A DNA stretch of 64,000 nucleotides from contig NC_091291.1 in the NCBI RefSeq assembly GCF_032444005.1, positions 109,430,001 to 109,494,000 on the forward strand. Reading direction: 5' to 3'. Shown one piece after another: positions 1,602-63,182 of the stretch. Origin of the DNA: Ranitomeya imitator (lineage: Eukaryota). A model generated the notes under the pieces. The model searched no databases, was not told the DNA's origin, and worked only from the letters and a program-made list of their open reading frames with translations. A program made the translations under genes and the position numbers. Position 1 is the stretch's first letter. Each line of letters begins with the position of its first letter.

Positions 1602-1921
1602 AGGGACTCTGTCACCTGAATTTGGAGGGAACAATCTTCAGCCATGGAGGCGGGGTTTTTGATTCACCCTTTCCTTACCCGCTGGCTGCATGCTGGCCGC
1701 ACTATTGGATTGAAGTTCATTCTCTGTCCTCCATAGTACACGCCTGTGCAAGGCAATCTTGCACAGCGCAGGTGTGTACTATGGAGGACAGAGAATGAAC
1801 TTCAATCCAATATTGCAGCCAGCATGCAGCCAGCGGGTAAGGAAAGGGTGAATCAAACACCCAAAAACCCCGCCTCCATGGCTGAAGATTGTTCCCTCCA
1901 AATTCAAGTGACAGTGTCCCT
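1602..1921. mobile_element. TTAA-target palindromic MITE (T2/Kolobok-like)
   Basis: The termini are AGGGAC(T/A)CTGTCAC...GTGACAGTGTCCCT with TTAA on both sides. The element is almost entirely a hairpin, and a second copy lies at 4047-4374. Confidence 0.8.
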
Positions 1922-2208
1922 TTAAAAGAGAAGTAGAAAAGTGCCTGGCATCCAAAACATTGTCAATTTATCATCAATTGTATAAAAATCTGTACTAGAG
2001 CCTTTATCTATCATACATTTAGTTGTGACTTCCTCATATGGAGCATGCACTTTTTTGATTCTCCAGACTCTAGAGCCTGACTTCATTCCCCAACTATCTA
2101 TTAATCCAGAACATTCGATAATCCACTACTGTTGAACACTCGTAAGTGCCTAACAAAAGGAATTTCACCAAACTACTAATTTGTTTTGGTTCAGTTACTC
2201 ACACCTAA

Positions 2209-2941: not shown

Positions 2942-2989
2942 TTAGTGATCTTTCAGATGTGCTAGTGTTCACCATAGGTCATTCGTTAA

Positions 2990-4900: not shown

Positions 4901-5885
4901 CTGACAATATAACTGCTGTGCTGAAGTATGTGAGTTTATATTCCCTTAGTTACCTGTCGGGTTTACCTAACATGACACACTACCGTACTGGCGGGAGCAA
5001 CCCTTCATTTCACTGTTTTGTGTGTAAGGATAGCGGGAAGAAGAGATTAGTGGACCAACTTAAAAAAGAAAAAAACACTACATTTTGGTATGAATTTGCC
5101 ACAAAAATTTTAATTCGCCATTTGGACGCCATTTTGGATTCTTTTGAGCTCTCAGAAGGGCTTACAATTTAATAAAAGATTATACTTGCTTGTCCACGTC
5201 TACCCATCCTCCTGCGTCAACTCCCCACCCAGACTTTCATGTTCTGCTGCTAGTTTGGCTTCATGGGGTCACGTAAGGCACAATGTGCATCACTGGCATC
5301 AATATAATGCCACAAACTGGTAACACCTAGTTGTCAATATTTCCAGGAAAATTAATATTTAATTTTGCAGTGGCAGCCAATATATCCAGGGGTATTCCCC
5401 TCCTAATCGCCAGCATGTCACACTCATGTAGTAGGGTCCCAGATATTTTCTTAAAACTGTGCATTATACCTTTTCTTTGGTATTGCTATTATCAATAAAT
5501 TGTAGTAATAGCAAATAGTGGGATAAAAACATAATATTTATTATGTAAAATCTAAAATAAATATAGGAGGTCCACTCCTGGCCAATAACCAAAACACACC
5601 AAAAAAGTAGCACACAACTTATAAATAATAAGAAACGCCCTGTTAAGCAGCACCCCAAAGTTACAAAACACCGGTTGGTGTATTAATGCTTAAGCAAAAC
5701 ATTGAAGGTGTGCATATAAAAAGGATAACTCAAATAAATATCATTATATTGAGTATAGATAAGTAATAATCTCACCACAATATGAAGATACATCCTCAGT
5801 TGTTCCCTGGCGACCCCTCATTTGCATGGAGGAAGGGTCAAGTCCGAACCCAAACTTGCCTAACATCAGAGATTCCAATTGTGGT

Positions 5886-6009
5886 CTCCCGATGCGTTTC
5901 CTCAGTTAAGATTCATCAGGGGGAGTAAAAAAGTATGGTCGTGCCTGGTCCCAGGCTAGTACTATATTGGCTCCCCTGATGAATCTTAAATGAGGAAACA
6001 CGTCAGAAG
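5886..6009. ncRNA. Inverted pair of degenerate minimal hammerhead ribozyme motifs (Penelope-like pLTR)
   Basis: The minus copy reads CTCCCC-CTGATGA-ATCTTAACTGAG-GAAA-CGCATC-GGGAG. The plus copy reads CTCCC-CTGATGA-ATCTTAAATGAG-GAAA-CACGTC-AGAAG. Stem II is weak, and each copy has a defect. Confidence 0.5.
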
Positions 6010-6613
6010 ATGACAATTGAATATGCAGATCAATTATCGGAAAGTGGAGCTGAGCACCTTATAGGTTGAAGGGTAGGATGCAGTGCCCCTTACTTTCTAA
6101 GAGGCCCCGAGAATGGTGGTTATAGCAGACTTATGAGGCAGCAGGTTGACTTGAACAGGGGCGAAACAGTTGGTGCTTGCAACAAAAGGTTGACACTTGC
6201 GGCAATTTGTAATGTTCCACCATTCTGCGGATGTCTCTGTGCCTCTGTTTCAGCAGGTCACACTCTCTATATTGGTCACTCACAACTCCTCTCCTGGTCA
6301 CCTTTCAATGGCAGCATTATTCTGGAATATATTGGTTTATCAATTTTGCACACTGGTGCAGCCTACTCTCACAATCATCCATGACAAAAGCAACATACTG
6401 ACTAAGGATTGGCATTTCTATTCACACGTCACCTTCCAGACTTTTCAGGTGATTATCTTTACAGACGGATATACTCTTCACTGTCAGGAACGAGAATCTG
6501 CTCCCTGTGAAAATCTGTGCCCAATATTGGGGGTACCTAAGGCTGTTGAGCATGCTACCCAACTGCATGAGGATATTTTTGATCCTGAGGATTATCTCTC
6601 CTGAAAACTCTAA

Positions 6614-6934
6614 GGCCTTCTTCAGACGTCCAATTTTTCCACGTACGAGAAGATAGGAGCGATTATTCCGATCAGAGTGTGGTCAGAGTGTCATCCAATT
6701 TTCTCATGCGTGAAGTCATTGAAGAAAATACTTTCTCCACCTTCTCCATTCTGACAGTCCGTGAAAATCAGATTTTTTTTTTTAATGGACCAATTGACTT
6801 GGATTTTTTAATTTTTGATCCGATACGTCTCTGCCATTTTGCTCTCACCGACTTGTGACTTGCCCCATTAACTATCACAGGTGCGAGTGCTATCCATGAA
6901 AATCAGAGCAAAATTCGGATGTCTGAATGAGGCC
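6614..6934. mobile_element. PIF/Harbinger-like MITE
   Basis: The termini are TAA|GGCCTTCTTCAGACGTCC...GGATGTCTGAATGAGGCC|CAA. Confidence 0.65.
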
Positions 6935-7362
6935 CAACTGTGACCTCATCACTCTCTCCTCAAGGCAATGGAATAATTCCGTCTGTTGAAAATATATTGC
7001 ATCCTAAAACTTTTAAAGGACAACTCAGATAAAGCAATGACATTGTGTAAGTGGCACAATGGACACGTCACAATGCAGAGCTACAAAACATACAACTGAG
7101 GAGCGTTATTCTATAGGGAACAGACCGGTTGGGACAGACCACAGGCTGTTTATAAATTACATGGAGCACTGGGCTTAAGGGGGTTAAATGCATATACGAT
7201 ATGTCCCCAATGAGTTGTCCTTATAGAGACGACATTCTTGCACGTTAATATTTGGCTAATATAAACATCTGGTGGCACTTCTCCTTTAAGAGACTGCTTA
7301 GATACAAAACCCAGAGGAGAAACAGGAAGTCACAGGAGGACAAAGTATCAGAAACCGTGAAA

Positions 7363-7539
7363 ATGTTTGGAGTATTAGCTTCTCCGCTTTGTGCAATCAG
7401 CGTTTTTCTTCTTTTATGTCTTCTGATGTTTTTGGGGATAACTTGGTATGAATCCTCAAAAGCGGAGTACCCCCCGGGGATTGCAAATCCTGAATTACTT
7501 CGGAGATTTTATACATTTTTGACAGGCGTTCTCCTCCTG
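7363..7539 (+). CDS. AADACL4-like: AADAC-family esterase paralog B, exon 1 (N-terminal hydrophobic anchor)
   Basis: ATG at 7363 starts MFGVLASPLCAISVFLLLCLLMFLGITWYE. The donor is CTG|GTGAGT. The exon is 177 nt, phase 0, the same size as paralog C exon 1. Confidence 0.85.
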
Positions 7540-8149
7540 GTGAGTTCATGACCGGAATCTGATTTGTGTTGCTTCTTCCTACAAACCTCACAATCCCCGC
7601 TTTACATGCAATTCTACTTCTGCTACTGGGATCAGATGTTACACTGAAGCCATTGGGATTTTATGTTGTTGAAAACCCTGCAGTTTTTATGGCATTTTAT
7701 GTTTTCGTTGTGTTTTCCCATAAACTTCAGTAGAGACAACGGCTTCTATGAAAATCATTTCCAAACGCTACATCGTGTAGTACCGCAATATGACAGGCAA
7801 ATAAATTTTTTATAAAATTATTACTGGGCTGTTACCAAGGCAAAATATAATAAGTTCTTTTGGAATTTTTGTGTTGCATTTTTTGTTATGTGGAAATGTG
7901 CAGCTGGCGGCTTTCCTGTAAATTGTACTTGGAAGTGTCCAGTGGGAAACATAGAAATCAGGGGTCCCCATAGCACTTGCATGAATTGTGTGAATTGTGC
8001 ACGGCTTCCTAACATACAATTGTACAGTAAAGTCAGGCAGGATCACATCATGTAGGCGCAGTCACACAAGAGCATAAGTCCAACAGACAAGGAAGAGGAA
8101 CATGTAAAGTGGCGCACAAAATAGTGCCCTAATGAAGCCCCTCCTTGTT

Positions 8150-26546: not shown

Positions 26547-27663
26547 GGGATTTGAAAGCGAATTTGAGCGATGTTGGTGCCACCCCAAGAACATCATTCA
26601 AATTGCGTGGGCAGCGACAACTGTGACTGAATGACATGAAGCACACCCCTACGACTAAATGAGCAGGCATGATATAACTATATAACGTGCATTTTTCACA
26701 TGATTAGACCACTGCTTTTAATGAAAAAAAATGTGTTAGTGATGCACATTGCATCACCAACAATGCACAGGGGACAGTTTACATGCTAAAATGGACATGA
26801 CTGGTTCCCTTTAAGAACAGAGAGGATCTTTAATAGGATATAGACTGGCAATAAGTGCCACAATGAATATTACTGAATTGCCAGCGTGTGTTTAGTTATT
26901 CCAGTCCAGAAATGCTAGTGGTCACTACAGGTTATCCATTAATGTGGACTATGTCCTCATACGTCCAGAGCTTTCTTATCATCTCATCCTAAGCTTGAAG
27001 GTATATGCTGGAGAAAAAAAACAAAAAAAAAAAAGACAAAGCGCTACTGGGGTAATAATGCTTAAAAACAAAAACCCCACGAAAGATGGGCGGGTAGGAG
27101 CGCTCACCTGGGGAGGTTATGCTATGGCATCACTGATTTTAGGGCTTTTTCTCCAGCCTATGTGGGGTGCTGCAGGCGCTGGAGAGCCTGTCGGTACGAG
27201 GTATAGGGTATAGGTTTTCTGTTTAGTGTCGGTCATTCCTTATAGTCACGGGCACAGGTTTCTGTCAGGGCTCGTGCATACAGCTCAATATATCTGACGT
27301 CTGCTCTTCGTGGTATTCACAGATGACACTCGTACCCATGATATTCTGTGGAGCTTCGCACATGTCCATTTTTTTGTGCTTGGACCGAGGAAAAATTGGA
27401 GACGTCCGATTCTGATCCAAGTGTCAGATTAAAATTGGCAATGCCAGTCTATGGGATGTGAAAAGCATGGGACCGCGCTCGGATGACATCTGAGTGCAGT
27501 CCAATTTTCACAGACTGACAGAATGGAGAAGGTGGAGAAAGTTTTTTTTCTCCACCTCATTAAAAAACTGATGACACTCTGATCAAAACCCGAAAAAACT
27601 TGGCACTCTAGATGAATAACTATTATATGCAAAAGGTTTATTGATGTGCATCCATAAAGGCAA

Positions 27664-27703
27664 GTCGAACGTTTTCGGTCCACATGCGAACCTTCATCAG
27701 AAC
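27664..27703 (-). ncRNA. Minimal type-I hammerhead ribozyme motif
   Basis: The minus strand reads GTT-CTGATGA-A-GGTTCG-CATG-TGGACC-GAA-AACGTT-C-GAC. It has an intact core, a 6-bp stem II, a palindromic stem III, a UUC triplet and AATAAA ~25 nt downstream. Confidence 0.7.
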
Positions 27704-28748
27704 AAATATACTGGATGCAGCAAGACGTCCTGACCACGTAGGCGCACGTGTGATGCGACCGGAGTCGCTGGGTAAATGAGCGCCGATTTAGTTACAGCAG
27801 GGATTTTGCTCATTTTGTTTCGTGTAGGTTTTGTATGTTTTATGGCCAATGTGAACATGCGTTTATGTGCTGAATGTATACCAAGTCAAACCAAGCTCAA
27901 TTTTTTTTTTTGCATTCTGTGTAATCCTGAGTGTGGGCTCCCTCTCCTGAGCTGGTGTCTACTGGTTGGGACCCAGTCCTTTTGTCTGCCCTTATTCACA
28001 CTGAGGTCAACTCTGACACATGGTAAGGTTTTTAATATTTGCCAGCGTAGGACCGTCCCGATCAGAGTTAACTTGCTGTGGGATGGCTTTTATGCTATTT
28101 TTGATCAAACACAGTATTACTAAGAACCTTGTGTTATTTAAATGCACTTTTGCTTTTTACTTATTTAGTTACAGCAGGGTTTTTGCTCATTTTGTTTCTT
28201 GTAGGTTTTGTGTATTTTGTGGCCACTGTGAACATGCGTTTATGTGCTGCGTGTATACCAACTCAAACCAAGCTCAATTTATGTGGTTTTTTTTCTGTGT
28301 AAGTGTATTTGCACAATTTCATTATTTGCAGCAGAAAAATCTGAAAATCCTGATGTACTTGCAGGAAAAACACAGCATAAAATTCATGCATTTTTTTTTT
28401 ACTCCTTTTTGATGCATCCATTAATATGTGTGAAATCTGCTGCAAAAACGCTGAAAGAATTGACACGCTCCAGATCGACATCACAAATGACCAATGTGTG
28501 CACGAGACTTCAGGAATCTCATTCGCTTCGCTGTTTGTAGCAAATCATTCAGGTTTTGTGACAAATCTGCAAATCTTGTAAGGAGGCTCCAATGGGCACG
28601 TGAAATTCCACCGTGCGCACAGCTCCTCCGTCCCCTCCAGGCCGCTGCCACTCCCTCACCTGCTGCAGAAGGAACAGAAGAGCAGGAAATCGACAAGTGT
28701 CAACTCAAAGTCAGTTGTGCCTGCGCTGAGCACCCGGCAGCAGCAGCC

Positions 28749-39653: not shown

Positions 39654-39880
39654 TTAAGGGACCTCTTAGAACCTTAAAAAATCTGCCTCCATAGCTGGAT
39701 GCTGACTTAGGCTCACACCCCTTGGACACTTTGTGTAAGAGACCTCTCAGTTGTCAATTCATCTATTAACATTTTAGTAACTGAAACTAACTGGACTGGT
39801 TTTTTGAAAACAAAGGAAAAATGAGAGGTGAAAAAATGTGTTGACATATAGGAATCTTATGTGTATGTTTGTTTGTTTAG

Positions 39881-40652
39881 GTACCGCCTGGCGCCAGAAC
39901 ATAAGTACCCTGCGGCATTTGATGATTGTCTAAAGGCCACAAGACATTTTTTGAAGACTGCAAAAGAATATGGTGTAGACCCATCATCTGTAATAATCAG
40001 TGGTGACAGTGCTGGGGGTAATCTCACTGCTGCCGTTTGCCAAGACCTTTTGGGCGCAGACCTTCCAAAGCCTCTTGCCCAGGTGCTGATATACCCATTG
40101 GTCCAAGGTATTGATTTCCACTTACCATCCTATACCCAAAACTGTGCAGTGCCCATTCTCTATCGGGAACGAGCTGTTTTCTACATGATAAACTATATTG
40201 AAGGCAACCTGCAAATGATGGAAGAAGTTATAGATGGAGACCATGTTCCTGTTGACTTGAAGTTGAAGTTCAAGAAGTGGTTGGGTCTTGATAATATTCC
40301 TGATGAGTTTAAGGTCCGGGGTATTAAGCATCCTCTGATGGCTTCACATTCTGAAGATGTCTACGAAGCCCACAAGCAACTGTTCGAGACACACTTCTCT
40401 CCATTGTTGGCCGAGGACTCTGTCTTCCGTCTTCTCCCCAAAGCTTACGTTCTAACATGTGAGTTTGACGTCTTGCGTGACGATGGAATCCTTTATAAGA
40501 AACGTCTGGAGGACAATGGAGTCCCGGTAACATGGTTTCATCTCAAAGATGGCTTCCATGGAATAGTTAGCTTTTTCGACAATGGAAAACTCACTTTTGA
40601 ATCTGGAAAGTTGGCTGTCGATAATATTGTAAAGTTCATTAATGATGTTTGA
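39881..40652 (+). CDS. AADACL4-like: Paralog C exon 4 (catalytic triad)
   Basis: The acceptor is tttag|GTACCGC. GDSAG, CEFDVLRDDG and DGFHG are present, ending in TGA. The spliced CDS is 1239 nt (412 aa). Confidence 0.93.
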
Positions 40653-45130: not shown

Positions 45131-46119
45131 AATGAATAGCTGCAGTTCTGAAGACCAAAGGCGATTAACCCAATGGGTGGTAGATCGGTGCCTCCAATAA
45201 AGCGGCCATTCACTGAGATTTGCCTTACTGTACAAAGATTACCCTCACTCCCGCAGACCCTGTCCCCAGTGGAGCTCACAATCTAATTTTCCTGTCCCAG
45301 GCAGATTATGGAAACTAGATTACCCAACCAGTATGATTTTGGAATGTGGATTATATTGGAGAATTTGGGGAGGATCTCTTAAGACAGGAAGCACATACTG
45401 TACATATTCCATGGAGATGTTATCTTTAGTAAACCCCATGATCCGAGCACGGCGAGGCAACATTGCTAACCATTGGGTCACCGTGCTTTTCATTACATGC
45501 GCTGCCTACTTCTCTACAGCACATTCTGAGCACCGCTGAATCCGCACAGCCCCCTCACTGTCTGTGCAATGTGTCAGGCAATGTCTGATGCCACCGCTAC
45601 CGTCTGCCAGGATCATCGGACTAAAATCTGAAATCATCTATGTAACCTAACGACTGGTGCTAACTGGTAACACCACTGTCTGGAAGGCTCCACCAGGAAC
45701 AATTGCAGAACTGTCAGAAGAAATCCCAGGGACCTCAGAGTTCTGGAAAGAAAATCCTGTGCCGCCTGTCATCTAAATTATCTACATTTGTGAGCAGCAT
45801 GTTCAGCGTCATACTCAATGTGATGCGCCAGGATACAAGGACTGGAGTCATAAAGCAGAGACACAAATATAATAATATACGTACAGATGTGAAAAACGGC
45901 AATAACCACAAGGTGGCGATATTCATTATGCATATTTAAGTCATAACTTGGAGAAGGGAATTTTTCTAGAATTAAATCCCTTGAATACGTTATTTAGGTA
46001 CAGTTTGGGCAATGTTCACAGTGTGATTGTGCACAGTTGTCACCCATCTTTAATTTCTTCTTTCTTTATGAAGATGTCCATGCTTTGTCTGATAAGGAAA
46101 TTCACATAAGAAGAGCTCA

Positions 46120-49100
46120 GCGCACACATTCCACAAGCACAGCACACTTGTCATGCAAGCACAGCATGCACATCACACAAGCACAGCACATACATCACAC
46201 AAGCACAGCATGCACATCACACAAGCACAGCACATACATCACACAAGCACAGCACATACATCACACAAGCACAGCACATACATCACACAAGCACAGCACA
46301 TACATCACACATGCACAGCACATACATCACACAAGCACAGCATGCACATCACACAAGCACAGCACATACATCACACAAGCACAGCACATACATCACACAA
46401 GCACAGCATGCACATCACACAAGCACAGCACATACATCACACAAGCACAGCACATACATCACACAAGCACAGCACATACATCACACAAGCACAGCACATA
46501 CATCACACATGCACAGCACACACGTTACACAAGAACAGCAGATATGCCACACAAGCACAGCACACGTCACACAAGCCCATTGCATACATTACAAAAGCAC
46601 AGAGCACATATCACACAAGCACAGCACATACATCACACATGCACAGCACATACATCACACAAGCACAACATATATGCCACAAAAGTACAGCACATACATC
46701 ACACAAGCACAGCACACACGTCACACAAGCATAGCGCACATTGTATACATCAGAAAAGCACAGCGCACATGTCACACAAGCACAACGCATATGCCACAAA
46801 AGCACAGCACATATACTGTATCACACAAGCACAGCGCACACATCACACAAGTACAGTGCATACATCACACAAGCACAGCACACACGTCACACAAGCACAG
46901 CGCACATTGTATACATCACAAAAGCACAGCACATATATCACACAAGCACAGTGCATACATGACACAAGCACAGTGCACACGTCACACAAGCACAGTGCAT
47001 ACATCACACAAGCACAGCACACACGTCACACAAGCACAGTGCATACATCACACAAGCACAGTGCATACATCACACAAGCACAGTGCATACATCACACAAG
47101 CACAGTGCATACATCACACAAGCACAGCACACACATCACACAAGCACAGTGCATACATCACACAAGCACAGCACACACATCACACAAGCATAGTGCACAT
47201 TGTATACGTCACAAAATCACAGCGCACATATCACACAATCACAATACATATGCCACAAAAGCACAGCACATATACTGTATCACACATGCACAGTGCATAC
47301 ATCACACAAGCACAGCGCACACGTCACACAAGCACAGCACATACGTTACACAAGAACAGCAGATATGCCACACAAACACAGCACATGTCACACAAGCCCA
47401 TTGCATACATTACGAAAGCACAGAGCACATATCACACAAGCACAACATATATACGACACAAAAGCACAGCACATACATCACAAAGCACAGTGCATATATC
47501 ACGCAAGCACAGTGCATACATGACACAAGCACAGGGCATACATCACACAAGCACGGCACACACGTCACACAAACACAGCACATACATAACATAAGCACAC
47601 CACACACGTTACACAAGCACAGCACATGCATCACACAAGCACAGTGCATATGTCACACAAGCCCATTGCATACATTACGAAAGCACAGAGCACATATCAC
47701 ACAAGCACAACATATATGCCACACAAGCACAGTGCATATATCACGCAAGCACAGCGCACATGTCACACAAGCACAGGGCATACATCACACAAGCACAGTG
47801 CATATATCACGCAAGCACAGTGCATACGTCACACAAGTACAGGGCATACATCACACAAGCACGGCACACACGTCACACAAACACAGCACATACATCACAT
47901 AAGCACACCACACACGTTACACAAGCACAGCACATACATCACATAAGCACAGCGCACACGTTACACAAGCACAGCACATACTGTACATCACACAAGCACA
48001 GCACATACATCACACAAGCACGGCGCACACATCACACAAGCACAGCACACACTTTACACAAGAACAGCACATACATCACACAAGCACAGCACATACATCA
48101 CACAAGCACAGCACATACATCACACAAGCACAGCACATACATCACACAAGCACAGCACACACTTTACACAAGCACAGCACATACATCACACAAGCACAGA
48201 ACATACATCACACAAGCATAGCGCACACATTACACTAGCACAGCACATGCATCACACAAGCACAGAACATACATCACACAAGCATAGCGCACACATCACA
48301 CAAGCACAGCACATGCATCACACAAGCACAGAACATACATCACACAAGCATAGCACATACATCACACAAGCACAGCACATACATCACACAAGCACAGCAC
48401 ATACATCACACAAGCATAGCGCACACATTACACAAGCACAGCACATGCATCACACAAGCACAGAACATACATCACACAAGCATAGCGCACACATTACACA
48501 AGCACAGCACATACATCACACAAGCACAGAACATACATCACACAAGCATAGCACATACATCACACAAGCACAGCACATACATCACACAAGCACAGAACAT
48601 ACATCACACAAGCATAGCGCACACATTACACAAGCACAGCACATGCATCACACAAGCACAGAACATACATCACACAAGCACAGCGCACACATTACACAAG
48701 CACAGCACATGCATCACACAAGCACAGAACATACATCACACAAGCATAGCACATACATCACACAAGCACAGCACATACATCACACAAGCACAGCACATAC
48801 ATCACACAAGCATAGCGCACACATTACACAAGCACAGCACATGCATCACACAAGCACAGAACATACATCACACAAGCATAGCGCACACATTACACAAGCA
48901 CAGCACATGCATCACACAAGCACAGCACATACATCACACAAGCACAGTGCATACATCACACAAGCACAGCACACACTTTACACAAGCACAGCACATACAT
49001 CACACAAGCACAGAACATACATCACACAAGCATAGCGCACACATTACACAAGCACAGCACATGCATCACACAAGCACAGAACATACATCACACAAGCATA

Positions 49101-50537
49101 GCACATACATCACACAAGCACAGCATATACATCACACAAGCACAGAACATACATCACACAAGCATAGCGCACACATTACACAAGCACAGCACATGCATCA
49201 CACAAGCACAGAACATACATCACACAAGCATAGCGCACACATTACACAAGCACAGCACATACATCACACAAGCACAGAACATACATCACACAAGCATAGC
49301 ACATACATCACACAAGCACAGCACATACATCACACAAGCACAGAACATACATCACACAAGCATAGCGCACACATTACACAAGCACAGCACATGCATCACA
49401 CAAGCACAGAACATACATCACACAAGCACAGCACACACTTTACACAAGCACAGCACATACATCACACAAGCACAGAACATACATCACACAAGCATAGCGC
49501 ACACATTACACAAGCACAGCACATGCATCACACAAGCACAGAACATACATCACACAAGCATAGCGCACACATTACACAAGCACAGCACATGCATCACACA
49601 AGCACAGAACATACATCACACAAGCATAGCACATACATCACACAAGCACAGCACATACATCACACAAGCACAGCACATACATCACACAAGCATAGCGCAC
49701 ACATTACACAAGCACAGCACATGCATCACACAAGCACAGAACATACATCACACAAGCATAGCGCACACATTACACAAGTACAGCACATACATCACACAAG
49801 CACAGAACATACATCACACAAGCACAGCACATACATCACACAAGCACAGAACATACATCACACAAGCATAGCGCACACATTACACAAGCATAGCGCACAC
49901 ATTACACAAGCACAGCACATACATCACACAAGCACAGAACATACATCACACAAGCATAGCACATACATCACACAAGCACAGAACATACATCACACAAGCA
50001 TAGCGCACACATTACACAAGCACAGCACATGCATCACACAAGCACAGAACATACATCACAAAAGCACAGCGCACACATTACACAAGCACAGCACATGCAT
50101 CACACAAGCACAGAACATACATCACACAAGCATAGCACATACATCACACAAGCACAGCACATACATCACACAAGCACAGCACATACATCACACAAGCACA
50201 GAACATACATCACACAAGCATAGCACATACATCACACAAGCACAGCACATACATCACACAAGCACAGCACATACATCACACAAGCATAGCGCACACATTA
50301 CACAAGCACAGCACATGCATCACACAAGCACAGAACATACATCACACAAGCATAGCGCACACATTACACAAGCACAGCACATACATCACACAAGCACAGA
50401 ACATACATCACACAAGCATAGCACATACATCACACAAGCACAGCACATACATCACACAAGCACAGAACATACATCACACAAGCATAGCGCACACATTACA
50501 CAAGCATAGCGCACACATTACACAAGCACAGCACATA
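46120..50537. repeat. Minisatellite, 22-bp unit (CACAAGCACAGCACATACATCA), left block, CFAP107 intron 1
   Basis: The periodicity is directly visible, with about 200 units. The translated period of 22 aa equals 3 units. Confidence 0.97.
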
Positions 50538-52527: not shown

Positions 52528-54134
52528 CAGTGGGGCAAAAAAGTATTTAGTCAGTCAGCAATAGTGCAAGTTCCACCACTTAAAAAGATGAGAGGCGTCT
52601 GTAATTTACATCATAGGTAGACCTCAACTATAGTAGACAAACTGAGAAAAAAAAAATCCAGAAAATCACATTGTCTGTTTTTTTAACATTTTATTTGCAT
52701 ATTATGGTGGAAAATAAGTATTTGGTCAGAAACAAAATTTCATCTCAATACTTTGTAATATATCCTTTGTTGGCAATGACAGATGTCAAACGTTTTCTGT
52801 AAGTCTTCCCAAGGTTGCCACACACTGTTGTTGGTATGTTGGCCCATTCCTCCATGCAGATCTCCTCTAGAGCAGTGATGTTTTTGGCTTTTTGCTTGGC
52901 AACACGGACTTTCAACTCCCTCCAAAGGTTTTCTATAAGGTTGAGATCTGGAGACTGGCTAGGCCACTCCAGGACCTTGAAATGCTTCATACGAAGCCAC
53001 TCCTTCGTTGCCCTGGCGGTGTGCTTTGGATCATTGTCATGTTGAAAGACCCAGCCACGTTTCATCTTCAATGCACTTGCTGATGGAAGGAGGTTTGCAC
53101 TCAAAATCTCACGATACATGGCCCCATTCATTCTTTCATGTACCCGGATCAGTCGTCCTGGCCCCTTTGCAGAGAAACAGCCCCAAAGCATGATGTTTCC
53201 ACCACCATGCTTTACAGTAGGTATGGTGTTTGATGGATGCAACTCAGTATTGTTTTTCCTCCAAACACGACAAGTTGTGTTTCTACCAAACAGTTCCAGT
53301 TTCGTTTCATCAGACCATAGGACATTCTCCCAAAACTCCTCTGGATCATCCAAATGCTCTCTAGCAAACTTCAGACGGGCCCGGACATGTACTGGCTTAA
53401 GCAGTGGGACACATCTGGCACTGCAGGATCTGAGTCCATGGTGGCGTAGTGTGTTACTTATGGTAGGCCTTGTTACATTGGTCCCAGCTCTCTGCAGTTC
53501 ATTCACTAGGTCCCCCCGCGTGCTTCTGGGATTTTTGCTCACCGTTCTTGTGATCATTCTGACCCCACGGGGTGGGATTTTGCGTGGAGCCCCAGATCGA
53601 GGGAGATTATCAGTGGTCTTGTATGTCTTCCATTTTCTAATTATTGCTCCCACTGTTGATTTCTTCACTCCAAGCTGGTTGGCTATTGCAGATTCAGTCT
53701 TCCCAGCCTGGTGCAGGGCTACAATTTTGTTTCTGGTGTCCTTTGACAGCTCTTTAGTCTTCACCATAGTGGAGTTTGGAGTCAGACTGTTTGAGGGTGT
53801 GCACAGGTGTCTTTTTATACTGATAACAAGTTTAAACAGGTGCCATTACTACAGGTAATGAGTGGAGGAAAGAGGAGACTCTTAAGGAAGAAGTTACAGG
53901 TCTGTGAGAGCCAGAAATCTTGATTGTTTGTTTCTGACCAAATACTTATTTTCCACCATAATATGCAAAAAAAATGATAAAAAAACAGACAATGTGATTT
54001 TCTGGATTTTTTTTTCTCAGTTTGCCTCCCATAGTTGAGGTCTACCTATGATGTAAATTACAGACGCCTCTCATCTTTTTAAGTGGTGGAACTTGCACTA
54101 TTGCTGACTGACTAAATACTTTTTTGCCCCACTG
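52528..54134 (-). mobile_element. Tc1 (IR/DR, DD34E) transposon, full length
   Basis: It has a TA TSD, the same TIRs and an open 340-aa ORF. Confidence 0.97.
52745..53767 (-). CDS. Tc1 transposase, 340 aa, open reading frame
   Basis: It has a paired-like HTH N-terminus with GAPRK, then WSDETK, HDNDPKH and NLIEN, with 34 residues between the second D and the E. Confidence 0.93.
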
Positions 54135-55783: not shown

Positions 55784-55897
55784 TTTATGAGAAGCAATCT
55801 TTCACCATCCAAGAGCTGCTATCAAAAAGACTTTGTACAGTTCTCAGGCACTAAACCAGATCGAATACAGAGGAGATATTTCTTAAAAAGGATGGAG
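55784..55897 (+). CDS. CFAP107: CFAP107 exon 2
   Basis: A long polypyrimidine tract and tag precede it. It encodes FMRSNLSPSKSCYQKDFVQFSGTKPDRIQRRYFLKRME. The donor is GAG|GTAAA and the exon is 114 nt, phase 0. Confidence 0.82.
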
Positions 55898-56052
55898 GTA
55901 AAAAAAAGTTCCTTAATATTGAAACTGAGCCTTCTGGATTGAGCTTTTGTTTAGTTTAGCATTATGATAGTTAATATGTGCTAAACACGACAATCATTAA
56001 CCATGAAAGCTGCAGTTGAGCTTGAAAACACACCTGGCTCCTTATAGGGGTG

Positions 56053-57086: not shown

Positions 57087-57112
57087 TTTCCACTTCTAGA
57101 GGGTGCATTACA

Positions 57113-57490
57113 CTATATGGAGGACTAAGAGCGTACATTATGCTATATGGAAGACTTTGGAGGTACATTATACTATATGGAGGAATATGGGGAGTGCATT
57201 ATACTATATGGAGGACTATGGGGAGTGCATTATACTATAAGGAGGTCTATGGGGAGTACATTATACTATATGGAGGATTATGTGGTGCGTTATGCTTTAT
57301 GGAAGACTATGGGGTGCATTATGCTATATGGAGGACTATGGGGTGCATTATGCTATATGGAGGACTATGGGGTGCATTATGCTATATGGAGGACTATGGG
57401 GTGCATTATGCTATATGGAGGACTATGGGGTGCATTATGCTATATGGAGGACTATGGGGTGCATTATGCTATATGGAAGGCTATGTGCAG
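57113..57490. repeat. Minisatellite, 29-bp unit (TATATGGAGGACTATGGGGTGCATTATGC)
   Basis: The periodicity is directly visible, with about 13 units. Confidence 0.93.
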
Positions 57491-57657
57491 GCTATTATAA
57501 TATTTGGGAGGCTATTTGGGAGCCTTTTTACTGTATGTAAACAATTGTACAATGTGAATATTTGTGTGGGATCCATCATGCTATGGGGAGGGCTGTTTGG
57601 TGGCCATTATACAGTGTGAGGCCATTATACTGCATGTAGGCCCATTATACTACATGA

Positions 57658-58606
57658 TACAAAAACCAGGCAGCATACTAAATACCACAGAGAGGATAGA
57701 GCACTAGGTAGTGCCACACTGCCCCTCACCCGAAAGGGAACCCAACTCCATACAGACCATGGAAAATAGGAGTACACCAGGAGCATATAGGTAATTTGAA
57801 AAATGTAATATTTTATTAAATCACATATAATATCATATAATTTACATCTAAATTTGCAAAAACCAGTAATATACAAAAGAATCTAATAGAGTACAAAGCT
57901 AAAGGCCGCCGGCCGGAAACCATGTGACCGCTCACATGGTAGATATCGGCCAATGGATGCAGGATAGAACGGCGCATGCGTGCGCTGCCAGCCGAGTACA
58001 ACGTCACGGAAGGCGTCACACCCCGCACGGGCGCCTGGGAAACAGATCCAGGACGCACGCGCAAGGCCAGGACAGACGCCGCCGCGGCGGAGGACAAGTG
58101 AAGGAGCACAGCGCATGCGCACACCCGCAAAACACTGGCCACAGACCAGTCTGTGGTTTCCGGCCGGCGGCATTTAAGGGAGCCACATACACTCCTGGGC
58201 ATCTCCCCTTGAAAAAGCAACTTCACTCGTGGGCGAAACGCGCGTCGGGGGTCGGTCTGTGGATCTCATCCGGTGTGCCCCGTCTTGGTGCCTCGCATTG
58301 ATCTTCCTTGGGTAAGAGCCGCTCTTATTCACCTGTCACCTTACGCCGCTTCTGGCATTTCACATGGACAGTGTGACAGGTAGTTGGCAGCTGTACATTT
58401 CTTCCACCTTTTGGTATGCATGTTGGCTCTGATGACGGTGTACACCGGGGGATGCTCACTCACGTTTTTACCATCCTTTAGCTTTGTACTCTATTAGATT
58501 CTTTTGTATATTACTGGTTTTTGCAAATTTATATGATATTATATGTGATTTAATAAAATATTACATTTTTCAAATTACCTATATGCTCCTGGTGTACTCC
58601 TAGTTT
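57658..58606. mobile_element. Penelope-like (pLTR) non-autonomous insertion with inverted arms
   Basis: It has a 16-bp direct repeat CCATTATACTACATGA at 57642-57657 and 58607-58622, inverted arms at 57759-57905 and 58475-58610, and contains a hammerhead motif. Confidence 0.7.
58204..58251 (+). ncRNA. Minimal type-I hammerhead ribozyme, U3-A8 variant
   Basis: It reads TCCCC-TTGAAAA-A-GC...GC-GAA-ACGCGCGT-C-GGGGG. Stem I is 5 bp, stem III is palindromic and the triplet is GUC. Confidence 0.6.
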
Positions 58607-59158
58607 CCATTATACTACATGAAGGACTGTATGGTGGATCACAGTTGGAGGATCATACTGTGTTGGGGTCACCATACTTTTCTGGGGGAGTTGAGGGGTG
58701 GGTACAGTAGGATCATCATACTGTGCATGTCTAGGGTACTGTGCAAGAATTCAATATGGGGTATCACAGTGTTTGTGTGGCACTTTTGTTGGCATCATAC
58801 TTTATGGGTGCAATGAATGGGAATCTAGGGCTCCAGCAGGAGGAAAATTACTTTACAAAGGCTGCTAAGTTGTGAGATATGCTCTTCTGTTACCCTGCTG
58901 AATATTCTTACTTTTCCTTTTTTGGGGGGGAAGGTTGGAGCAATTAGAACTTCTGCTCTGGAGCCCTATGATTTCTATGTACACCCCTGGCATCACATTA
59001 TGCCTTTAGTTCCAGATTATGGCAGCCCGTTGTAATTAGCGCACATCCAATGATTTCAGTGCCTTGCAGTCATGTCCATTGTGACTTTCTTGCTGTAAAA
59101 GCCAATTCCGAAAAACTGAAAACTGGGGAAAATGACATATTTGTATTCCATATTCCAG

Positions 59159-59333
59159 GGTTTACCAGGACATCATTTGCTGTCCCATCACGGAGAGCCC
59201 GGTTCTGGACACTTAGTCTCACACTATGACGACCATTACATAAGACGCGGCAACTCTACTTTGCCTCCTCTTCGGAGTTGGGATAGAAACTGTCTGACCT
59301 GGGCTCCAGAGAAATCTGACTTTCCTTCTACGG
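59159..59333 (+). CDS. CFAP107: CFAP107 exon 3
   Basis: The acceptor is ttccag. It encodes GLPGHHLLSHHGEP...SHYDDHY...LPPLRSW...WAPEKSDFP, conserved family motifs. The donor is G|GTAAA (phase 1). Confidence 0.9.
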
Positions 59334-59669
59334 GTAAAAGAAAAGTTTATTTAATTTTTCTTATTCCATTTCAATAGTATCAGAATGTTTAATTCAGCAA
59401 TTTCCCGGTGTCAGACGTGATCCCGCAGCTTAGGCCTCATTCAGATGTCTGTTTTAAACAGACAGAATGTGCATTTATTACCCTGTAACGACCTGTTCAC
59501 ATGTCCGTGTTTTTTTGTGTCCGCAAATAATCATGGAGACATGTCAAATTTCATCACTTTTTTAAATCAAAATCACCCATAGAAGTCTATGGGTCTGTAA
59601 AAATCCCAGCTAGCACACGGATGGTGTCAGTGTACACCCCATGTACTCCCCATTGCAGTGGAAAGGAAA

Positions 59670-61340
59670 TGGGCCAAATCCTCACTTCCAGGACTCCTTG
59701 TTCTTCTTTACGCAGATAATAGTTATTGATGACATTGGCCGTATGTTTGGGGTCTTTGTCCAGCTGCATACTAAATTTGGAGCCAATCAGAAGCCTCCCT
59801 GATGGTCTACGTGATGGATAAGTAACTGCCTGTATTTCTCAGCATTGAGATCCTGAACAAATCCCCAACTCAATTTGTTGAAATGTAACCCCAAACGTGC
59901 AGGACCCTCCTCTGTGGTTCACTGTTGCCTGCAGACCCTCATTATTGTACCCCTCTCCAAAAAACTGTCTGCTGTTACAACCAAATATTTCACATTACTC
60001 CAGGGAACCTGCTGCCATTTTGCTAGCCAGACTTTTCTGAATAGAAGTTGGGTGCATCTGGGTCCCACTGGTTGTTGCCAGTTCTGCACTGATGGCACTG
60101 CTGGAAATCTTCCAATTTAGCAGGAAACTAAGCATGATGTGTCTTTCATCTGCTGCACTAAAGGTACCTTCACACATAAGGATTTCGTTAACGATATCGT
60201 TGCATTTTGTGACGTAGCAACGATATCGTTAACGAAATCGTTATGCGTGACAACGACCAACGATCAGGCCCCTGCTGGGAGATCGTTGGTCGTTGGGGAA
60301 TGATCAGAACCTTTTTTTGGTCGCTGATCACCCGCTGTCATCGCTGAATCGGCGTGTGTGACGCCGATCCAGCGATGTGTTCACTGGTAACCAGGGTAAA
60401 TATCGGGTTACTAAGCGCAGGGCCGCACTTAGTAACCAGATATTTACCCTGGTTACCATTGTAAAAGTTAAAAAAAAAAAAAACAGTACATACTTACATT
60501 CCGATGTCTGTCACGTCTCCCGCCGTCAGCTTCCCGTACTGACTGTCAGCACCGGCCGGCCGTAAAGCAGAGCACAGGGGTGACGTCACCGCTCTGCTTT
60601 ACGGCCGGCGCTTACACAGTGCAGGGAAGCTGACGCCGGGGGACGTGACAGACATTGGAATGTGAGTATGTACTGTTTTTTTTTTTTTTACTTTTACAAT
60701 GGTAACCAGTGTAAATATCGGGTTACTAAGCGCGGCCCTGCGCTTAGTAATCCCAATATTTACCCTGGTTACCCGGGGACTTCGGCATCGTTGAAGAAAG
60801 TTTCAACGATGCCGAAGTCTTTCCCCTGATCGTTGGTCGCTGGAGAGAGCTGTCTGTGTGACAGCTCTCCAGCGACCACACAACGACTTACCAACGATCA
60901 CGGCCAGGTCGTATCGCTGGTCGTGATCGTTGGTAAGTCGTTTAGTGTAACGGTACCTTAAGTTTCCTTGGCCGAACTACTGCGACAACGGTCTTCAGCT
61001 TTGCTTATTTCTTGTTGCTTCTTCAAAAAAAACTTGAACAGCACAACTTGAAACCCCAGCCTTCTTTACATAGTTAATATGGAAAAAAGACACATGTCCA
61101 TCAACTTCAAGCAAGGGATGCTTTGAACTCTTGCCTGCTGGAGACCTTGCTGTTGCACTATAACTACCTTGTGTCTTGCTGCTGTGCTCATTCTGCGGCA
61201 TGAATCTGTCTTCCACAACCTCACCTTTATAGCAGAGTTTGGCTATTCCCCAGGGAGTTTTTAAAAGAACAAGTGTGTCTTTACGCAGTCTGATATTGGC
61301 AACACTGATTGGAGAGTGTCAGTATGTAGGGACAAGCCGC
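59670..61340 (-). mobile_element. Old Tc1 remnant split by a MITE at 60162-60958
   Basis: The minus-strand QLDKDPKHTANV...LEVRIWP resembles the QQDNDPKHT...WP motif. The sequence is continuous across the MITE's TAA TSD. Confidence 0.6.
60162..60958. mobile_element. PIF/Harbinger-like nested-palindrome MITE
   Basis: The termini are TAA|AGGTACCTTCACAC...GTGTAACGGTACCT|TAA, with the same internal hairpins as 2209-2941. Confidence 0.82.
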
Positions 61341-61490
61341 CAACTCGTCACAGTTATCAATTTAGTCATACGCTTCTTTTAAAAAAACAAGAGGAGAAGA
61401 CATTATAAATAATAAGAATTCTAGAATTGCTAATTCATAAAGATTGTCAGCTTTTACAGAAACACTTCATGAGTCACTTATCATAAATAT

Positions 61491-62491
61491 AAATAGAAAG
61501 AAGTCTAGCACTCAACTTAAGCGGCAAAAGATTTGATTTATTTGTAGCACTCGAAACGTTTCAGTCCATAAGGACTTTCTTCAGTCACTACAAAGTCATA
61601 ACAAAATAAACAAAATAAAGAGTACAACCAGTACAAAACAACGAAAGTATATACAAATGACAAAAAAACAAAATATCATATAAACATATAAAGCCGATAA
61701 CAATGAGGACATCATAAACGATCATATCTGAGTAAATATATGAAGGCAGTGGATATATAGCAAATAGCTCCGCTCAGTGCCAAATGAGGTGATAGTGAGT
61801 TGTTGTGAGGACCGATATAGCCAGAAGAAAGCAAAAAGGGAACAAAAAACGTACCGTGCCGTTAGAAGCCCGTAGGGCTGGGTTCAGAAAGAGCAGGGAT
61901 GCACAGAATGTGCCTAATAAAATGCAGAAAGAAGACAATCGGTAAATGGAGCAGGGAGTTCCCCCTGCTCCATTTACCGATTGTCTTCTTTCTGCATTTT
62001 ATTAGGCACATTCTGTGCATCCCTGCTCTTTCTGAACCCAGCCCTACGGGCTTCTAACGGCACGGTACGTTTTTTGTTCCCTTTTTGCTTTCTTCTGGCT
62101 ATATCGGTCCTCACAACAACTCACTATCACCTCATTTGGCACTGAGCGGAGCTATTTGCTATATATCCACTGCCTTCATATATTTACTCAGATATGATCG
62201 TTTATGATGTCCTCATTGTTATCGGCTTTATATGTTTATATGATATTTTGTTTTTTTGTCATTTGTATATACTTTCGTTGTTTTGTACTGGTTGTACTCT
62301 TTATTTTGTTTATTTTGTTATGACTTTGTAGTGACTGAAGAAAGTCCTTATGGACTGAAACGTTTCGAGTGCTACAAATAAATCAAATCTTTTGCCGCTT
62401 AAGTTGAGTGCTAGACTTCTTTCTATTTGTATTGAAGGTCTGGGAACCTAGTCTAAGCACCACAGTATAGCTGTGCACACGGTGTTTTCTC
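61491..62491. mobile_element. Penelope-like palindromic insertion (938-bp palindrome plus 63-bp tail)
   Basis: It has a 17-bp TSD TCACTTATCATAAATAT (61474-61490, 62492-62508), arms at 61491-61956 and 61963-62428, and a hammerhead followed by AATAAA in each arm. Confidence 0.8.
62328..62375 (+). ncRNA. Minimal type-I hammerhead ribozyme (mirror copy at 61544-61591, minus strand)
   Basis: It reads GTAGTGA-CTGAAGA-A-AGTCC-TTAT-GGACT-GAA-ACGT-T-TCGAGTGCTAC. The core is intact, stem II is 5 bp and the triplet is GUU, with predicted cleavage after 62364. Confidence 0.72.
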
Positions 62492-62901
62492 TCACTTATC
62501 ATAAATATGGCATGTCATTTATGTATGCGGTGTAAATGCCGCTCTCCTCCTAAACCCAACCTTGTTTTTCTTTTGTTTCTGTCCCTCATCGTTCCTGAGA
62601 TATGGCCGTTTCATCCTTGTATATGAATCTAGTCTTGACGGTCAAGTGGGCGGGACCTCAATGGGTTTTGTGGGAGTCACCGCCCTATTGGCTAAAAAGA
62701 GTGACATTTATATACACGTAAGACATGATCATATTTCAGGAATGAAGAGGCGCGGGAATAAAAGAAATACAGCGCCAGAGTCAGGAGAACAGCGGCATTT
62801 ACACCAGATAAATTACATATTTATGACAAATTACAGGTCTTAAGAAGATTTACATAAAAAAGGAGTAAAAGAGGGTGAAATAATATTTGTCTCTTTTTCA
62901 G

Positions 62902-63182
62902 ATCCTCCAACCAATTTTGGGCTTTTGCAAGAAAAGCAAAAAAACTGGAGAAAGCAAATCTCTGAAGAGCCGAGAAGCGTTTACTCTGCGTCATACCGGC
63001 AACCACCACCCTCCGCCCTCATCACCGTCCGCTACGGCGTGGCTCCCCGCATCCTGTCCAGCACTGTGCATCAGCCCAATAATACCAACAAAGCTTTAGA
63101 CTTTAAATGTCAAACGTACCTTCAAGTCCCAGACGACCTAGTTAGAAGAACTAACCACAACCTGACAATAGACTCATCCTAA
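62902..63182 (+). CDS. CFAP107: CFAP107 exon 4 (terminal)
   Basis: The acceptor tttttcag|AT gives (D)PPTNFGLLQEKQKNW...SVYSASYRQPP, ending in TAA at 63180-63182. The spliced CDS is 681 nt (226 aa). Confidence 0.87.

What the first reader, a model, noticed from the sequence alone, without database searches (positions are those of the whole stretch)
61474..62508. 938-bp perfect palindrome carrying twin hammerhead ribozymes, inserted with a 17-bp TSD in CFAP107 intron 3
Seen in the sequence: two 466-bp arms (61491-61956 and 61963-62428) in which I found no mismatch, a 6-nt loop AGTTCC, a 63-bp unpaired tail (62429-62491) and an exact 17-bp flanking duplication. Each arm holds a well-formed minimal type-I hammerhead followed by AATAAA. 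Established: Penelope-like elements carry minimal hammerheads with palindromic stem III in their pLTRs and make inverted, tailed insertions. Inference: this is a very recent, ORF-less, ribozyme-bearing element mobilised in trans, with the inversion made by a template switch. A family defined by this foldback design may be undescribed.
Basis: partly seen in the sequence, partly recalled or inferred. Interest (0 to 1): 0.8.

Follow-up and report, generated by a model that had tools for sequence, protein, structure and literature searches.

The report
Penelope-type inverted hammerhead insertion in frog
A young, protein-free piece of an abundant frog "jumping gene" family carrying a small self-cutting RNA motif was pasted into a cilia-gene intron as a perfect mirror-image pair, a layout already known for Penelope-like retrotransposons, so it is a clean textbook example and not a new kind of element.

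Summary
Two 466-nt arms are exact reverse complements, with a 6-nt spacer, a 63-nt one-sided tail and an exact 17-bp target duplication, in an intron of CFAP107. Each arm carries a minimal type-I hammerhead motif (3 loci in the window against 0.015 expected), although Rfam models miss it.

The "new foldback family" reading is not supported. Contigs from public runs show that arm plus tail belongs to a high-copy family, present under six organism labels and in RNA libraries. Other copies run on 5' past the palindrome centre. Both outer ends (about 62428/9 and 62491-94) recur in other copies.

This matches published Penelope-like element (PLE) insertion. The protein nicks and extends both target strands, and reverse transcription starts at two sites, with the "tail" lying between them. 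An inverted 5'-truncated copy is typical, and opposed hammerhead pairs 100-700 bp apart were reported in 2014. The scan's own notes list similar palindromes elsewhere in this genome.

One addition: a 267-nt GT..AG segment ends 3 nt before the ribozyme core, and copies without it exist as DNA. Only the joined form has the hammerhead fold as its best fold, as described for Drosophila virilis Penelope.

The loop and left junctions were not confirmed by independent reads. Self-cleavage and the autonomous parent are untested.

The parts
61474..61490 (.). Left copy of the 17-bp target-site duplication (14 of 17 bases A/T)
   Evidence: Exact direct repeat of 62492-62508.
61491..61956 (-). Left arm. 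An inverted, 5'-truncated copy of the element whose sense strand is the - strand; it lacks the last 63 nt of the family's 3' end.
   Evidence: Exact reverse complement of 61963-62428. Other copies also end without a tail at 61486-61491 next to unrelated DNA (X3 loose end, X2 record 2).
61957..61962 (.). Inversion joint or spacer, AGTTCC. CC (61961-62) continues the family sequence of the right arm; AGTT is not family sequence.
   Evidence: 144-nt contigs in X2 and X3 match from 61961 rightwards and carry 69 other letters upstream.
61963..62428 (+). Right arm. A 5'-truncated sense copy made of an exon-1-like part, an intron-like segment, the hammerhead and AATAAA.
62429..62491 (+). The 'tail': the normal 3'-terminal 63 nt of the family, present on one side only.
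   Evidence: Contigs of X2, X3 and X6 bridge 62428/62429, with word depth about 5,700. Family contigs diverge after 62494. In PLEs the tail is the stretch between two RT start sites.
62492..62508 (.). Right copy of the target-site duplication. Its first 3 nt (TCA) may equally belong to the element's 3' end.
   Evidence: Family contigs match up to 62494.
62328..62375 (+). Minimal type-I hammerhead motif. C3-A9 = 62335-62341 (CUGAAGA); extra A at 62342; helix II 62343-47/62352-56 with loop UUAU; G12-A14 = 62357-59; palindromic ACGU 62360-63; U17 = 62364. Predicted cut between 62364 and 62365.
   Evidence: Descriptor hit against 0.015 expected. Features as in Cervera & de la Pena 2014. The family majority has U at position 7 (canonical CUGAUGA): the mirror site 61580 reads T>A at depth 5566 of 5675. 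No Rfam hit.
61544..61591 (-). Mirror copy of the hammerhead motif. Predicted cut between 61555 and 61554 on the - strand.
62065..62331 (+). Intron-like 267-nt segment (GTACGT...pyrimidine-rich...TTTGTAG) that ends 3 nt before the hammerhead core. Its mirror is 61588-61854 on the - strand.
   Evidence: Joint 62063->62331 (GT..AG with the cut shifted by 1) in DNA runs X2 (depth 848) and X3 (29), in RNA-labelled run X6 (3.6), and as its mirror in X4. 67% A+T, 73% pyrimidines before the AG, no flanking duplication.
62377..62382 (+). AATAAA directly after helix I (mirror at 61537-61542 on the - strand)
   Evidence: An AATAAA followed by CTTTTGC is also found after the unrelated hammerhead at 27700(-).

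Best explanation
This is one real, young retrotransposition event made by the enzyme of a Penelope-like element (PLE) acting in trans on a short or 5'-truncated non-coding RNA of an abundant hammerhead-bearing family.

The RNA reads left to right in the right arm. It has an exon-1-like part, a retained 267-nt intron, a minimal hammerhead, AATAAA and a 3' module that ends at 62491.

Shown: the anatomy, the family membership, the recurrent termini and the motif.

Inferred from published biochemistry:
- The GIY-YIG nuclease nicked both strands of an AT-rich target 17 bp apart.
- Both 3'-OH ends primed cDNA on element RNA. The bottom strand primed at the outer start site (62491). The top strand primed at the inner start site (62428/9), where 4 bp plus a G-T wobble can pair with the primer.
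- Both cDNAs ended at the same 5' point (61956 and 61961). This happened either because they ran off one RNA end or through a jump onto each other.
- They were joined with 4 untemplated bases, giving a perfect palindrome with a one-sided 63-nt tail and a TSD.

The hammerheads are passengers of the family's 3' region. In this copy they sit on opposite strands, and the retained intron disfavours the active fold.
For: - Exact arms, spacer, tail and TSD.
- The element, not the flanks, is shared with other runs. Shares rise for all runs when only loop, arm and tail are queried.
- Word depth is 430-7,600 on the element against 3-12 on the flanks. The family continues 5' of 61961. Termini recur at 61486-91 (tail-less) and 62494. 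The tail is contiguous with the arm in other copies.
- Craig et al. 2021 describe 5' truncation, an adjacent inverted 5'-truncated copy, a one-sided tail and intron retention.
- Frangieh et al. 2024 show that the PLE protein cleaves and extends both strands, that there are two RT start sites with the tail between them, and that targets are AT-rich.
- Cervera & de la Pena 2014 describe the min-HHR features, opposed pairs 100-700 bp apart, and an intron ending at helix I in D. virilis.
- The motif is far above chance.
- The hammerhead fold is the MFE only in the joined form.
- There is no RT ORF in the window.
Against: - No RT/GIY-YIG parent sharing this 3' module was found; the genome could not be searched.
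- The tail is 63 nt against the usual 30-40.
- 10.1-11.1 is A-U, not the highly conserved G-C, and the cleavage triplet is GUU. No Rfam hammerhead model scores, and self-cleavage is untested.
- The spacer and left junction were not seen in independent contigs.
- The equal 5' ends of the two arms are not predicted by two independent priming events unless the RNA had a defined 5' end or one cDNA copied the other.
- Word depths are not copy numbers.
Confidence: 0.8

Rival explanations
1. Same PLE-type event, but the inversion arose by snap-back. A single cDNA primed at 62491 reached 61961, folded back on itself and copied itself. The second strand stopped 63 nt short and was then joined to the upstream target end.
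For: Perfectly symmetric arms with a 6-nt spacer follow automatically from self-copying. Four untemplated bases at the turn fit a template jump.
Against: Snap-back does not explain why the tail-less end falls on a boundary that recurs in other copies next to unrelated DNA, or why that boundary can pair with the top-strand primer. In vitro, the PLE protein extends both strands from two start sites. The neighbouring insertion at 57642-58622 has unequal inverted copies that snap-back cannot make.
Confidence: 0.25
2. Assembly or sequencing artefact: a foldback chimeric read or missed adapter created the inverted arm.
For: No independent contig shown bridges the spacer or the left junction. Craig et al. 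2021 note that such structures trouble assemblies.
Against: An artefact would not stop at an exact 17-bp TSD, and it would not end one arm at a terminus that recurs in the family. A contig from run X2, with 3 differences from the window in the right flank, carries the tail-to-flank junction. The scan notes list similar palindromes elsewhere in this genome (unchecked).
Confidence: 0.04
3. A foldback or MITE-type DNA transposon whose terminal inverted repeats happen to contain hammerhead-like motifs.
For: Long inverted arms with a TSD are the hallmark of Foldback elements.
Against: Other family copies continue past the palindrome centre. The ends are asymmetric (tail). The sense strands point outward with a defined 3' end. 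Copies with and without a GT..AG segment exist as DNA, which points to an RNA intermediate. A 17-bp AT-rich TSD of variable length is PLE-like.
Confidence: 0.03
4. A non-LTR retrozyme in the strict sense: a tandem hammerhead unit that cycles through a circular RNA, here caught as a fold-back.
For: Amphibian genomes are rich in retrozymes derived from PLE pLTRs. The scan notes report retrozyme fold-backs in this genome (unchecked). The family is present in RNA libraries.
Against: Each strand has only one hammerhead and there is no tandem unit. The family has a defined linear 3' end at 62491-94. The inversion joint is 403 nt upstream of the predicted cut site, and the sequence there is unlike the post-cleavage sequence.
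Confidence: 0.1

Closest known systems
PLE insertion architecture: pLTR, inverted 5'-truncated copy and one-sided tail (Evgen'ev & Arkhipova 2005; Arkhipova 2006; Craig et al. 2021, PMC8557442)
   Same: TSD, 5' truncation, an adjacent inverted copy, an extension on one side only, a hammerhead in the terminal non-coding region, and a retained intron.
   Different: The tail is 63 nt, not 30-40. There is no ORF and no direct pLTR. The two copies are truncated at the same point, so the result is a near-spacerless perfect palindrome.
Poseidon_Ac (PAc) of Anolis carolinensis, in vitro mechanism (Frangieh et al. 2024, PMC11167929)
   Same: An AT-rich target. Both strands are usable as primers. Two RT start sites lie downstream of the hammerhead cut site, with the tail between them. 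Here the two termini lie 64 and 127 nt after the predicted cut site.
   Different: In PAc the start sites lie in an AC-rich stem-loop inside the ORF, and the primer is not homologous to the RNA. Here there is no ORF and no significant structure (z = 0.22), and the primer can pair with 4-5 nt at the inner site.
Minimal PLE hammerheads (Cervera & de la Pena 2014, PMC4209133), including the D. virilis Penelope motif at the intron end
   Same: Conserved boxes, a nucleotide between 9 and 10.1, a palindromic 15.2-16.2, helix II longer than helix I, opposed pairs a few hundred bp apart, and an intron 3' end at the 5' side of helix I that gives different ribozymes before and after splicing.
   Different: A10.1-U11.1 where G-C is usual, and a GUU triplet. 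The host is a frog, and the intron is 267 nt against 75 nt in D. virilis.
Vertebrate non-LTR retrozymes (Cervera & de la Pena 2020, PMC7229834; Li, Clavereau & Pollet 2026 preprint)
   Same: Non-coding, hammerhead-bearing, related to PLE pLTRs, abundant in amphibians and expressed.
   Different: Not tandem. There is a single ribozyme per strand and a defined linear 3' end, so no unit can be excised and circularised from this copy.
L1 twin priming (Ostertag & Kazazian 2001; cited from my own knowledge)
   Same: Both target strands prime cDNA, giving an inversion inside one TSD.
   Different: Twin priming inverts one part of a single copy. Here the same sequence is present twice.

Membership tests
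PLE-mediated insertion | Target-site duplication of variable length in AT-rich DNA | tested here: met
   Exact 17-bp TSD, 14 of 17 bases A/T. The neighbouring insertion has a 16-bp TSD.
PLE-mediated insertion | 5' truncation with an adjacent inverted 5'-truncated copy | tested here: met
   The family continues 5' of 61961 in X2 and X3 contigs. The inverted arm is 61491-61956.
PLE-mediated insertion | One-sided tail bounded by two recurrent RT start sites | tested here: met
   The tail is 62429-62491. Both boundaries recur as ends of other copies. Its length is 63 nt against the published 30-40.
PLE-mediated insertion | An autonomous partner with RT and GIY-YIG sharing the 3' region | not testable with these tools
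   No RT or GIY-YIG ORF in the window. The genome is not searchable. The motif is absent from metagenome and viral contigs.
PLE-mediated insertion | Intron retained after retrotransposition | tested here: inconclusive
   A GT..AG 267-nt segment with a pyrimidine tract. Copies with and without it exist as DNA. Splicing itself was not shown.
Minimal PLE hammerhead (min-HHR) | CUGANGA and GAAA boxes with a C3-G8 pair | tested here: met
   CUGAAGA at 62335-41 and GAAA at 62357-60. The family majority reads CUGAUGA.
Minimal PLE hammerhead (min-HHR) | [quoted passage not shown] | tested here: met
   A at 62342. The feature is listed.
Minimal PLE hammerhead (min-HHR) | G10.1-C11.1 base pair | tested here: not met
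   A62343-U62356 takes the place of G-C.
Minimal PLE hammerhead (min-HHR) | Palindromic 15.2-16.2, allowing a helix III formed between two molecules | tested here: met
   ACGU at 62360-63, followed by U17.
Minimal PLE hammerhead (min-HHR) | Self-cleavage (weak, as dimers or protein-assisted) | not testable with these tools
   Only folding was done. The HHR fold is the MFE in the joined form (-17.2). In the intron-containing form it scores -9.9 against an MFE of -18.2.
Rfam hammerhead families | Score against the covariance models | tested here: not met
   No hammerhead hit at E<=10 in 61000-63000, and none at gathering score in the window. Inference: these models include a helix III, which this motif lacks.
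Non-LTR retrozyme | Two or more tandem units, each with a hammerhead on the same strand | tested here: not met
   One motif per strand, and no direct repeat of the unit.
Foldback / MITE DNA transposon | The palindrome centre and symmetric termini are shared by family members | tested here: not met
   Other copies read through the centre. The ends are asymmetric.

The most novel reading that the evidence does not exclude
The family may be a self-contained pLTR-only transcription unit of about 0.53 kb. In this reading the transcript starts near the palindrome centre (about 61961), so both cDNAs ran off the same natural 5' end. It would have a 104-nt first exon, a 267-nt intron and a second exon with the hammerhead and the RT-recognition module. 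Splicing would act as a switch that builds the ribozyme's helix I. That arrangement would then be conserved between insect Penelope and a vertebrate PLE derivative, linking spliceosome passage to ribozyme competence and to template choice.
Probability: 0.2. Interest if true: 0.55.

Novelty: new member of a known kind. Interest (0 to 1): 0.3.

Why it matters
It is a very clean natural record of how Penelope-like elements insert. The exact TSD, the two arms ending at the two reverse-transcription start sites and an untouched inversion joint agree with the 2024 in vitro work on a lizard element, here in a frog and on a non-coding passenger RNA.

The added observation is an intron-like segment that abuts the ribozyme core and decides whether the hammerhead fold is favoured. 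It extends a feature so far described for Drosophila virilis Penelope to a vertebrate family, and it gives a testable link between splicing and ribozyme folding.

A 938-bp perfect palindrome inside a gene intron is also a potential long double-stranded RNA and a fragile site. That is of local interest for CFAP107, but nothing here shows an effect.

Tried and rejected
- Rfam at E<=10 on the region and at gathering score on the window: no hammerhead. The only hits were spurious miRNA/snoRNA matches caused by the hairpin.
- Exact 27-mer of the ribozyme in metagenome and viral contig collections: no match. I left out the bacterial genome collection as pointless for a frog repeat.
- The search of earlier findings by sequence: blank.
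- A stable RNA structure at the 3' module or tail, like the AC-rich stem-loop of PAc: not significant (z = 0.22). The tail of the neighbouring element gave z = -1.03.
- An RT or GIY-YIG parent in the window: none. The long ORFs are a Tc1/Sleeping Beauty-type transposase, Abhydrolase_3 exons and ORFs with no Pfam hit.
- An empty-site allele or a contig across the spacer: none listed in four runs. This is uninformative, because contigs drop rare paths next to high-copy repeats.
- The hammerhead claimed for the neighbouring insertion (57642-58622) was not found by my descriptor, which allows U3-A8. I did not pursue it.
- A TE-insertion origin for the 267-nt segment was rejected, because at most 1 nt is shared at its two ends.

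Full report
OBSERVATION

A script shows that 61491-61956 and 61963-62428 are exact reverse complements (466 nt). The spacer is AGTTCC. The stretch 62429-62491 (63 nt) has no mirror copy. TCACTTATCATAAATAT occurs at 61474-61490 and again at 62492-62508. The repeat finder extends the arms to 471 nt because 4 of the next 5 bases also match. No other copy of arm or tail lies in the 64-kb window.

Pfam finds CFAP107 (PF22595) exons on the + strand at about 55787-55942, 59132-59377 and 62925-63182. The insertion therefore sits in a CFAP107 intron. The intron number was not verified.

THE RIBOZYME MOTIF

Rfam gives no hammerhead hit, at gathering score or at E<=10. The hits in the region are artefacts of the long hairpin.

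I wrote a descriptor from the published definition of minimal PLE hammerheads. It requires:
- CUGANGA, or the U3-A8 variant;
- an optional nucleotide after A9;
- a helix II of 4-8 bp;
- GAA;
- a palindromic A...U;
- H17;
- at least 3 bp of helix I.

The descriptor finds three loci in the window: 62335(+), its mirror 61584(-), and an unrelated one at 27700(-). The expectation is 0.015 loci per shuffled window.

The motif has the features that Cervera & de la Pena (2014) list as emerging beyond their descriptor:
- the unpaired base between positions 9 and 10.1 (A62342);
- a helix II (5 bp) longer than the inner helix I;
- a palindromic ACGU in place of helix III.

It departs from the published motif in having A-U, not G-C, at 10.1-11.1 and a GUU triplet.

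In the wider family, position 7 is U. The mirror site 61580 reads T>A at depth 5566 of 5675, which gives the canonical CUGAUGA.

The two motifs lie on opposite strands, so no single transcript carries both in sense. They cannot act as a dimer in cis.

IT IS A COPY OF AN ABUNDANT FAMILY, NOT A FOLDBACK FAMILY

When the search for sequencing runs was restricted to spacer, right arm and tail, the share of words held rose for every run. Examples are 0.59 to 0.76, 0.36 to 0.62 and 0.24 to 0.42. The shared sequence is therefore the element, not the locus. It occurs under six organism labels and in RNA-labelled libraries.

Laying contigs of four runs on 61300-62700 gave the following.
- Word depth is 3-12 on the flanks. 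It is about 430 on the inner arm, 1,200-2,000 near the centre, and 5,700-7,600 on the last ~150 nt, including the tail. These are rough measures, not copy numbers.
- 144-nt contigs in two organisms match from 61961 rightwards and carry 69 other letters upstream. Other copies therefore read through the palindrome centre, this copy is 5'-truncated there, and AGTT is not family sequence.
- Contigs bridge 62428/62429, so the tail is the ordinary continuation of the arm.
- Contigs diverge into different flanks after 62494, so that is the family's 3' end. The first three TSD bases may belong to it.
- Other copies end without a tail at 61486-61491 next to unrelated DNA (an X3 loose end of 227 letters, and a 1,728-nt X2 contig).

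Both outer boundaries of this insertion are therefore recurrent termini of the family.

FIT TO PUBLISHED PLE BIOLOGY

Craig et al. (2021) describe PLE insertions as heavily 5'-truncated. They often have an inverted 5'-truncated copy adjacent, a 30-40-bp tail at one end only, hammerheads in the pLTR and retained introns.

Frangieh et al. (2024) purified an Anolis PLE protein and showed the following:
- it cleaves and extends both target strands, unlike R2 or L1;
- it prefers AT-rich DNA;
- it starts reverse transcription at two adjacent internal sites;
- the genomic tail is the sequence between those sites;
- the hammerhead is protein-assisted and not needed for insertion in vitro.

Here each arm has its antisense strand attached to a target 3'-OH, which is the topology expected from priming on both strands. 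The two ends lie 64 and 127 nt after the predicted ribozyme cut site, a geometry similar to PAc. The target is 14 of 17 bases A/T.

Sequence shows two possible primer contacts. The top-strand primer end (AATAT) can pair with the RNA at 62429-62433 through 4 bp and a G-T wobble. The bottom-strand primer shares TCA with the RNA end.

Two features are not explained by two independent primings: both cDNAs stop within 5 nt of each other (61956 and 61961), and they are joined by 4 untemplated bases. The possible causes are that both ran off the same RNA 5' end, that one RT followed the other on one RNA molecule, or that one cDNA copied the other or itself (snap-back). I cannot tell these apart.

The recurrent tail-less terminus argues against pure snap-back. 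So does the neighbouring insertion at 57642-58622, which has a 16-bp TSD, unequal inverted copies and a 101-nt tail.

AN INTRON-LIKE SEGMENT AT THE RIBOZYME

The same joint, 62063->62331, appears in DNA runs of two organisms (depths 848 and 29), in a run of unrecorded type from a third organism as its mirror, and in an RNA-labelled run (3.6). Read one base to the right it skips 62065-62331, which begins GT and ends AG.

The segment is 267 nt and 67% A+T. It starts GTACGT and ends in a 73%-pyrimidine run followed by TTTGTAG. It has TTTAT branch-like sites 18 and 28 nt upstream of the AG. At most 1 nt is shared at its two borders, so it is not a TE insertion. Copies without it have a higher word depth than copies with it (848 against 432).

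Because both forms exist as DNA, the RNA contigs do not prove splicing. I rate the intron reading at about 0.65-0.7.

The acceptor lies 3 nt before C3, so the outer helix I comes from the intron in this copy and from the upstream exon in the joined form. In the joined form the hammerhead fold is the minimum-energy structure (-17.2 kcal/mol; helix I of 3+5 bp). In the intron-containing form the hammerhead fold scores -9.9 against -18.2 for a competing fold that buries the CUGA box.

Cervera & de la Pena described the same layout for D. virilis Penelope, where the intron end maps to the 5' end of helix I and spliced and unspliced ribozymes differ. I found no report of it for a vertebrate in the papers I searched. 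This was not an exhaustive search.

IS THE PALINDROME REAL, AND HOW OLD IS IT

The single read-laying run showed no contig across the spacer or the left junction, and no empty-site joint. Contigs drop low-depth paths beside high-copy repeats, so this is not evidence against the palindrome. One X2 contig (340 nt, depth 12.3, three differences from the window) runs from 62464 in the tail into the right flank.

An artefact would not end at an exact TSD and at two family termini. I put the artefact reading at about 4%.

Zero differences in 466 bp give a 95% upper age of about 3 My at an assumed 1e-9 substitutions per site per year. Gene conversion between the arms could keep the arms identical in an older insertion.

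CLASSIFICATION

This is a PLE-type insertion of a truncated, ORF-less, hammerhead-bearing copy. The longest stop-free run is 61 codons, and there is no RT in the window.
- It is not a retrozyme in the strict sense, because it has no tandem units.
- It is not a foldback DNA transposon.
- Whether its parent is an autonomous PLE or a non-autonomous pLTR derivative, as Li et al. (2026) describe for Xenopus retrozymes, could not be tested.

The scan's notes for this genome, which they call a poison frog, list many retrozyme and PLE fold-back insertions, including other palindromes with opposed hammerheads. I used them as leads only.

VERDICT

The mechanism is of a known kind, and the proposed new family is not supported. 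The intron-ribozyme coupling adds modest value.

Noticed in passing
window 57642-58622: A second TSD-bounded inverted insertion in the preceding CFAP107 intron. It has a 16-bp TSD (CCATTATACTACATGA), inverted copies at 57759-57905 and 58475-58610, a 101-nt one-sided tail at 57658-57758 and a unique ~570-bp centre. The unequal arms fit priming on both strands. My descriptor did not find the hammerhead claimed for it.
   Followed up: partly
window 27640-27710 (- strand): A third minimal hammerhead (CUGAUGA, extra A, G10.1-C11.1, palindromic AACGUU, C17), followed by AATAAA and CTTTTGC. It shares short blocks (AATAAA-CTTTTGC, GAGTGC[CT]A) with the 3' module of the studied element, so the two 3' regions may be distantly related.
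   Followed up: partly
window 52745-53767 (- strand): An uninterrupted 340-aa ORF of a Tc1/Sleeping Beauty-type transposase (HTH_SB, HTH_Tnp_Tc3_2, DDE_3).
   Followed up: no
window 397-1245 and 39861-40652 (+ strand): Two large ORFs with Abhydrolase_3 domains (arylacetamide-deacetylase-like), probably terminal exons of tandemly duplicated genes upstream of CFAP107.
   Followed up: no
window 57100-57520: An array of about 14 tandem units of 29-31 bp (CATTATRCTATATGGAGGACTATGGGGTG-like). The second insertion's target site (CCATTATACTACATGA) resembles one unit.
   Followed up: no
window 46000-50500: A stretch with extreme AT and GC skew (AT skew up to 0.62) that carries long ORFs (621, 520 and 262 aa) with no Pfam hit. 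It may be a repeat or a degenerate element.
   Followed up: no
window 62521-62813: An imperfect inverted repeat (108-nt arms, 72% complementary, 77 nt apart) just right of the insertion, MITE-like. It is the cause of a spurious MIR2630 hit.
   Followed up: no
window 62366-62375 and 62407-62414: The helix I 3' strand GAGUGCUA is repeated 39 nt downstream (GUUGAGUGCUAGAC). This offers an alternative partner for the helix I 5' strand. Its significance is unknown.
   Followed up: no
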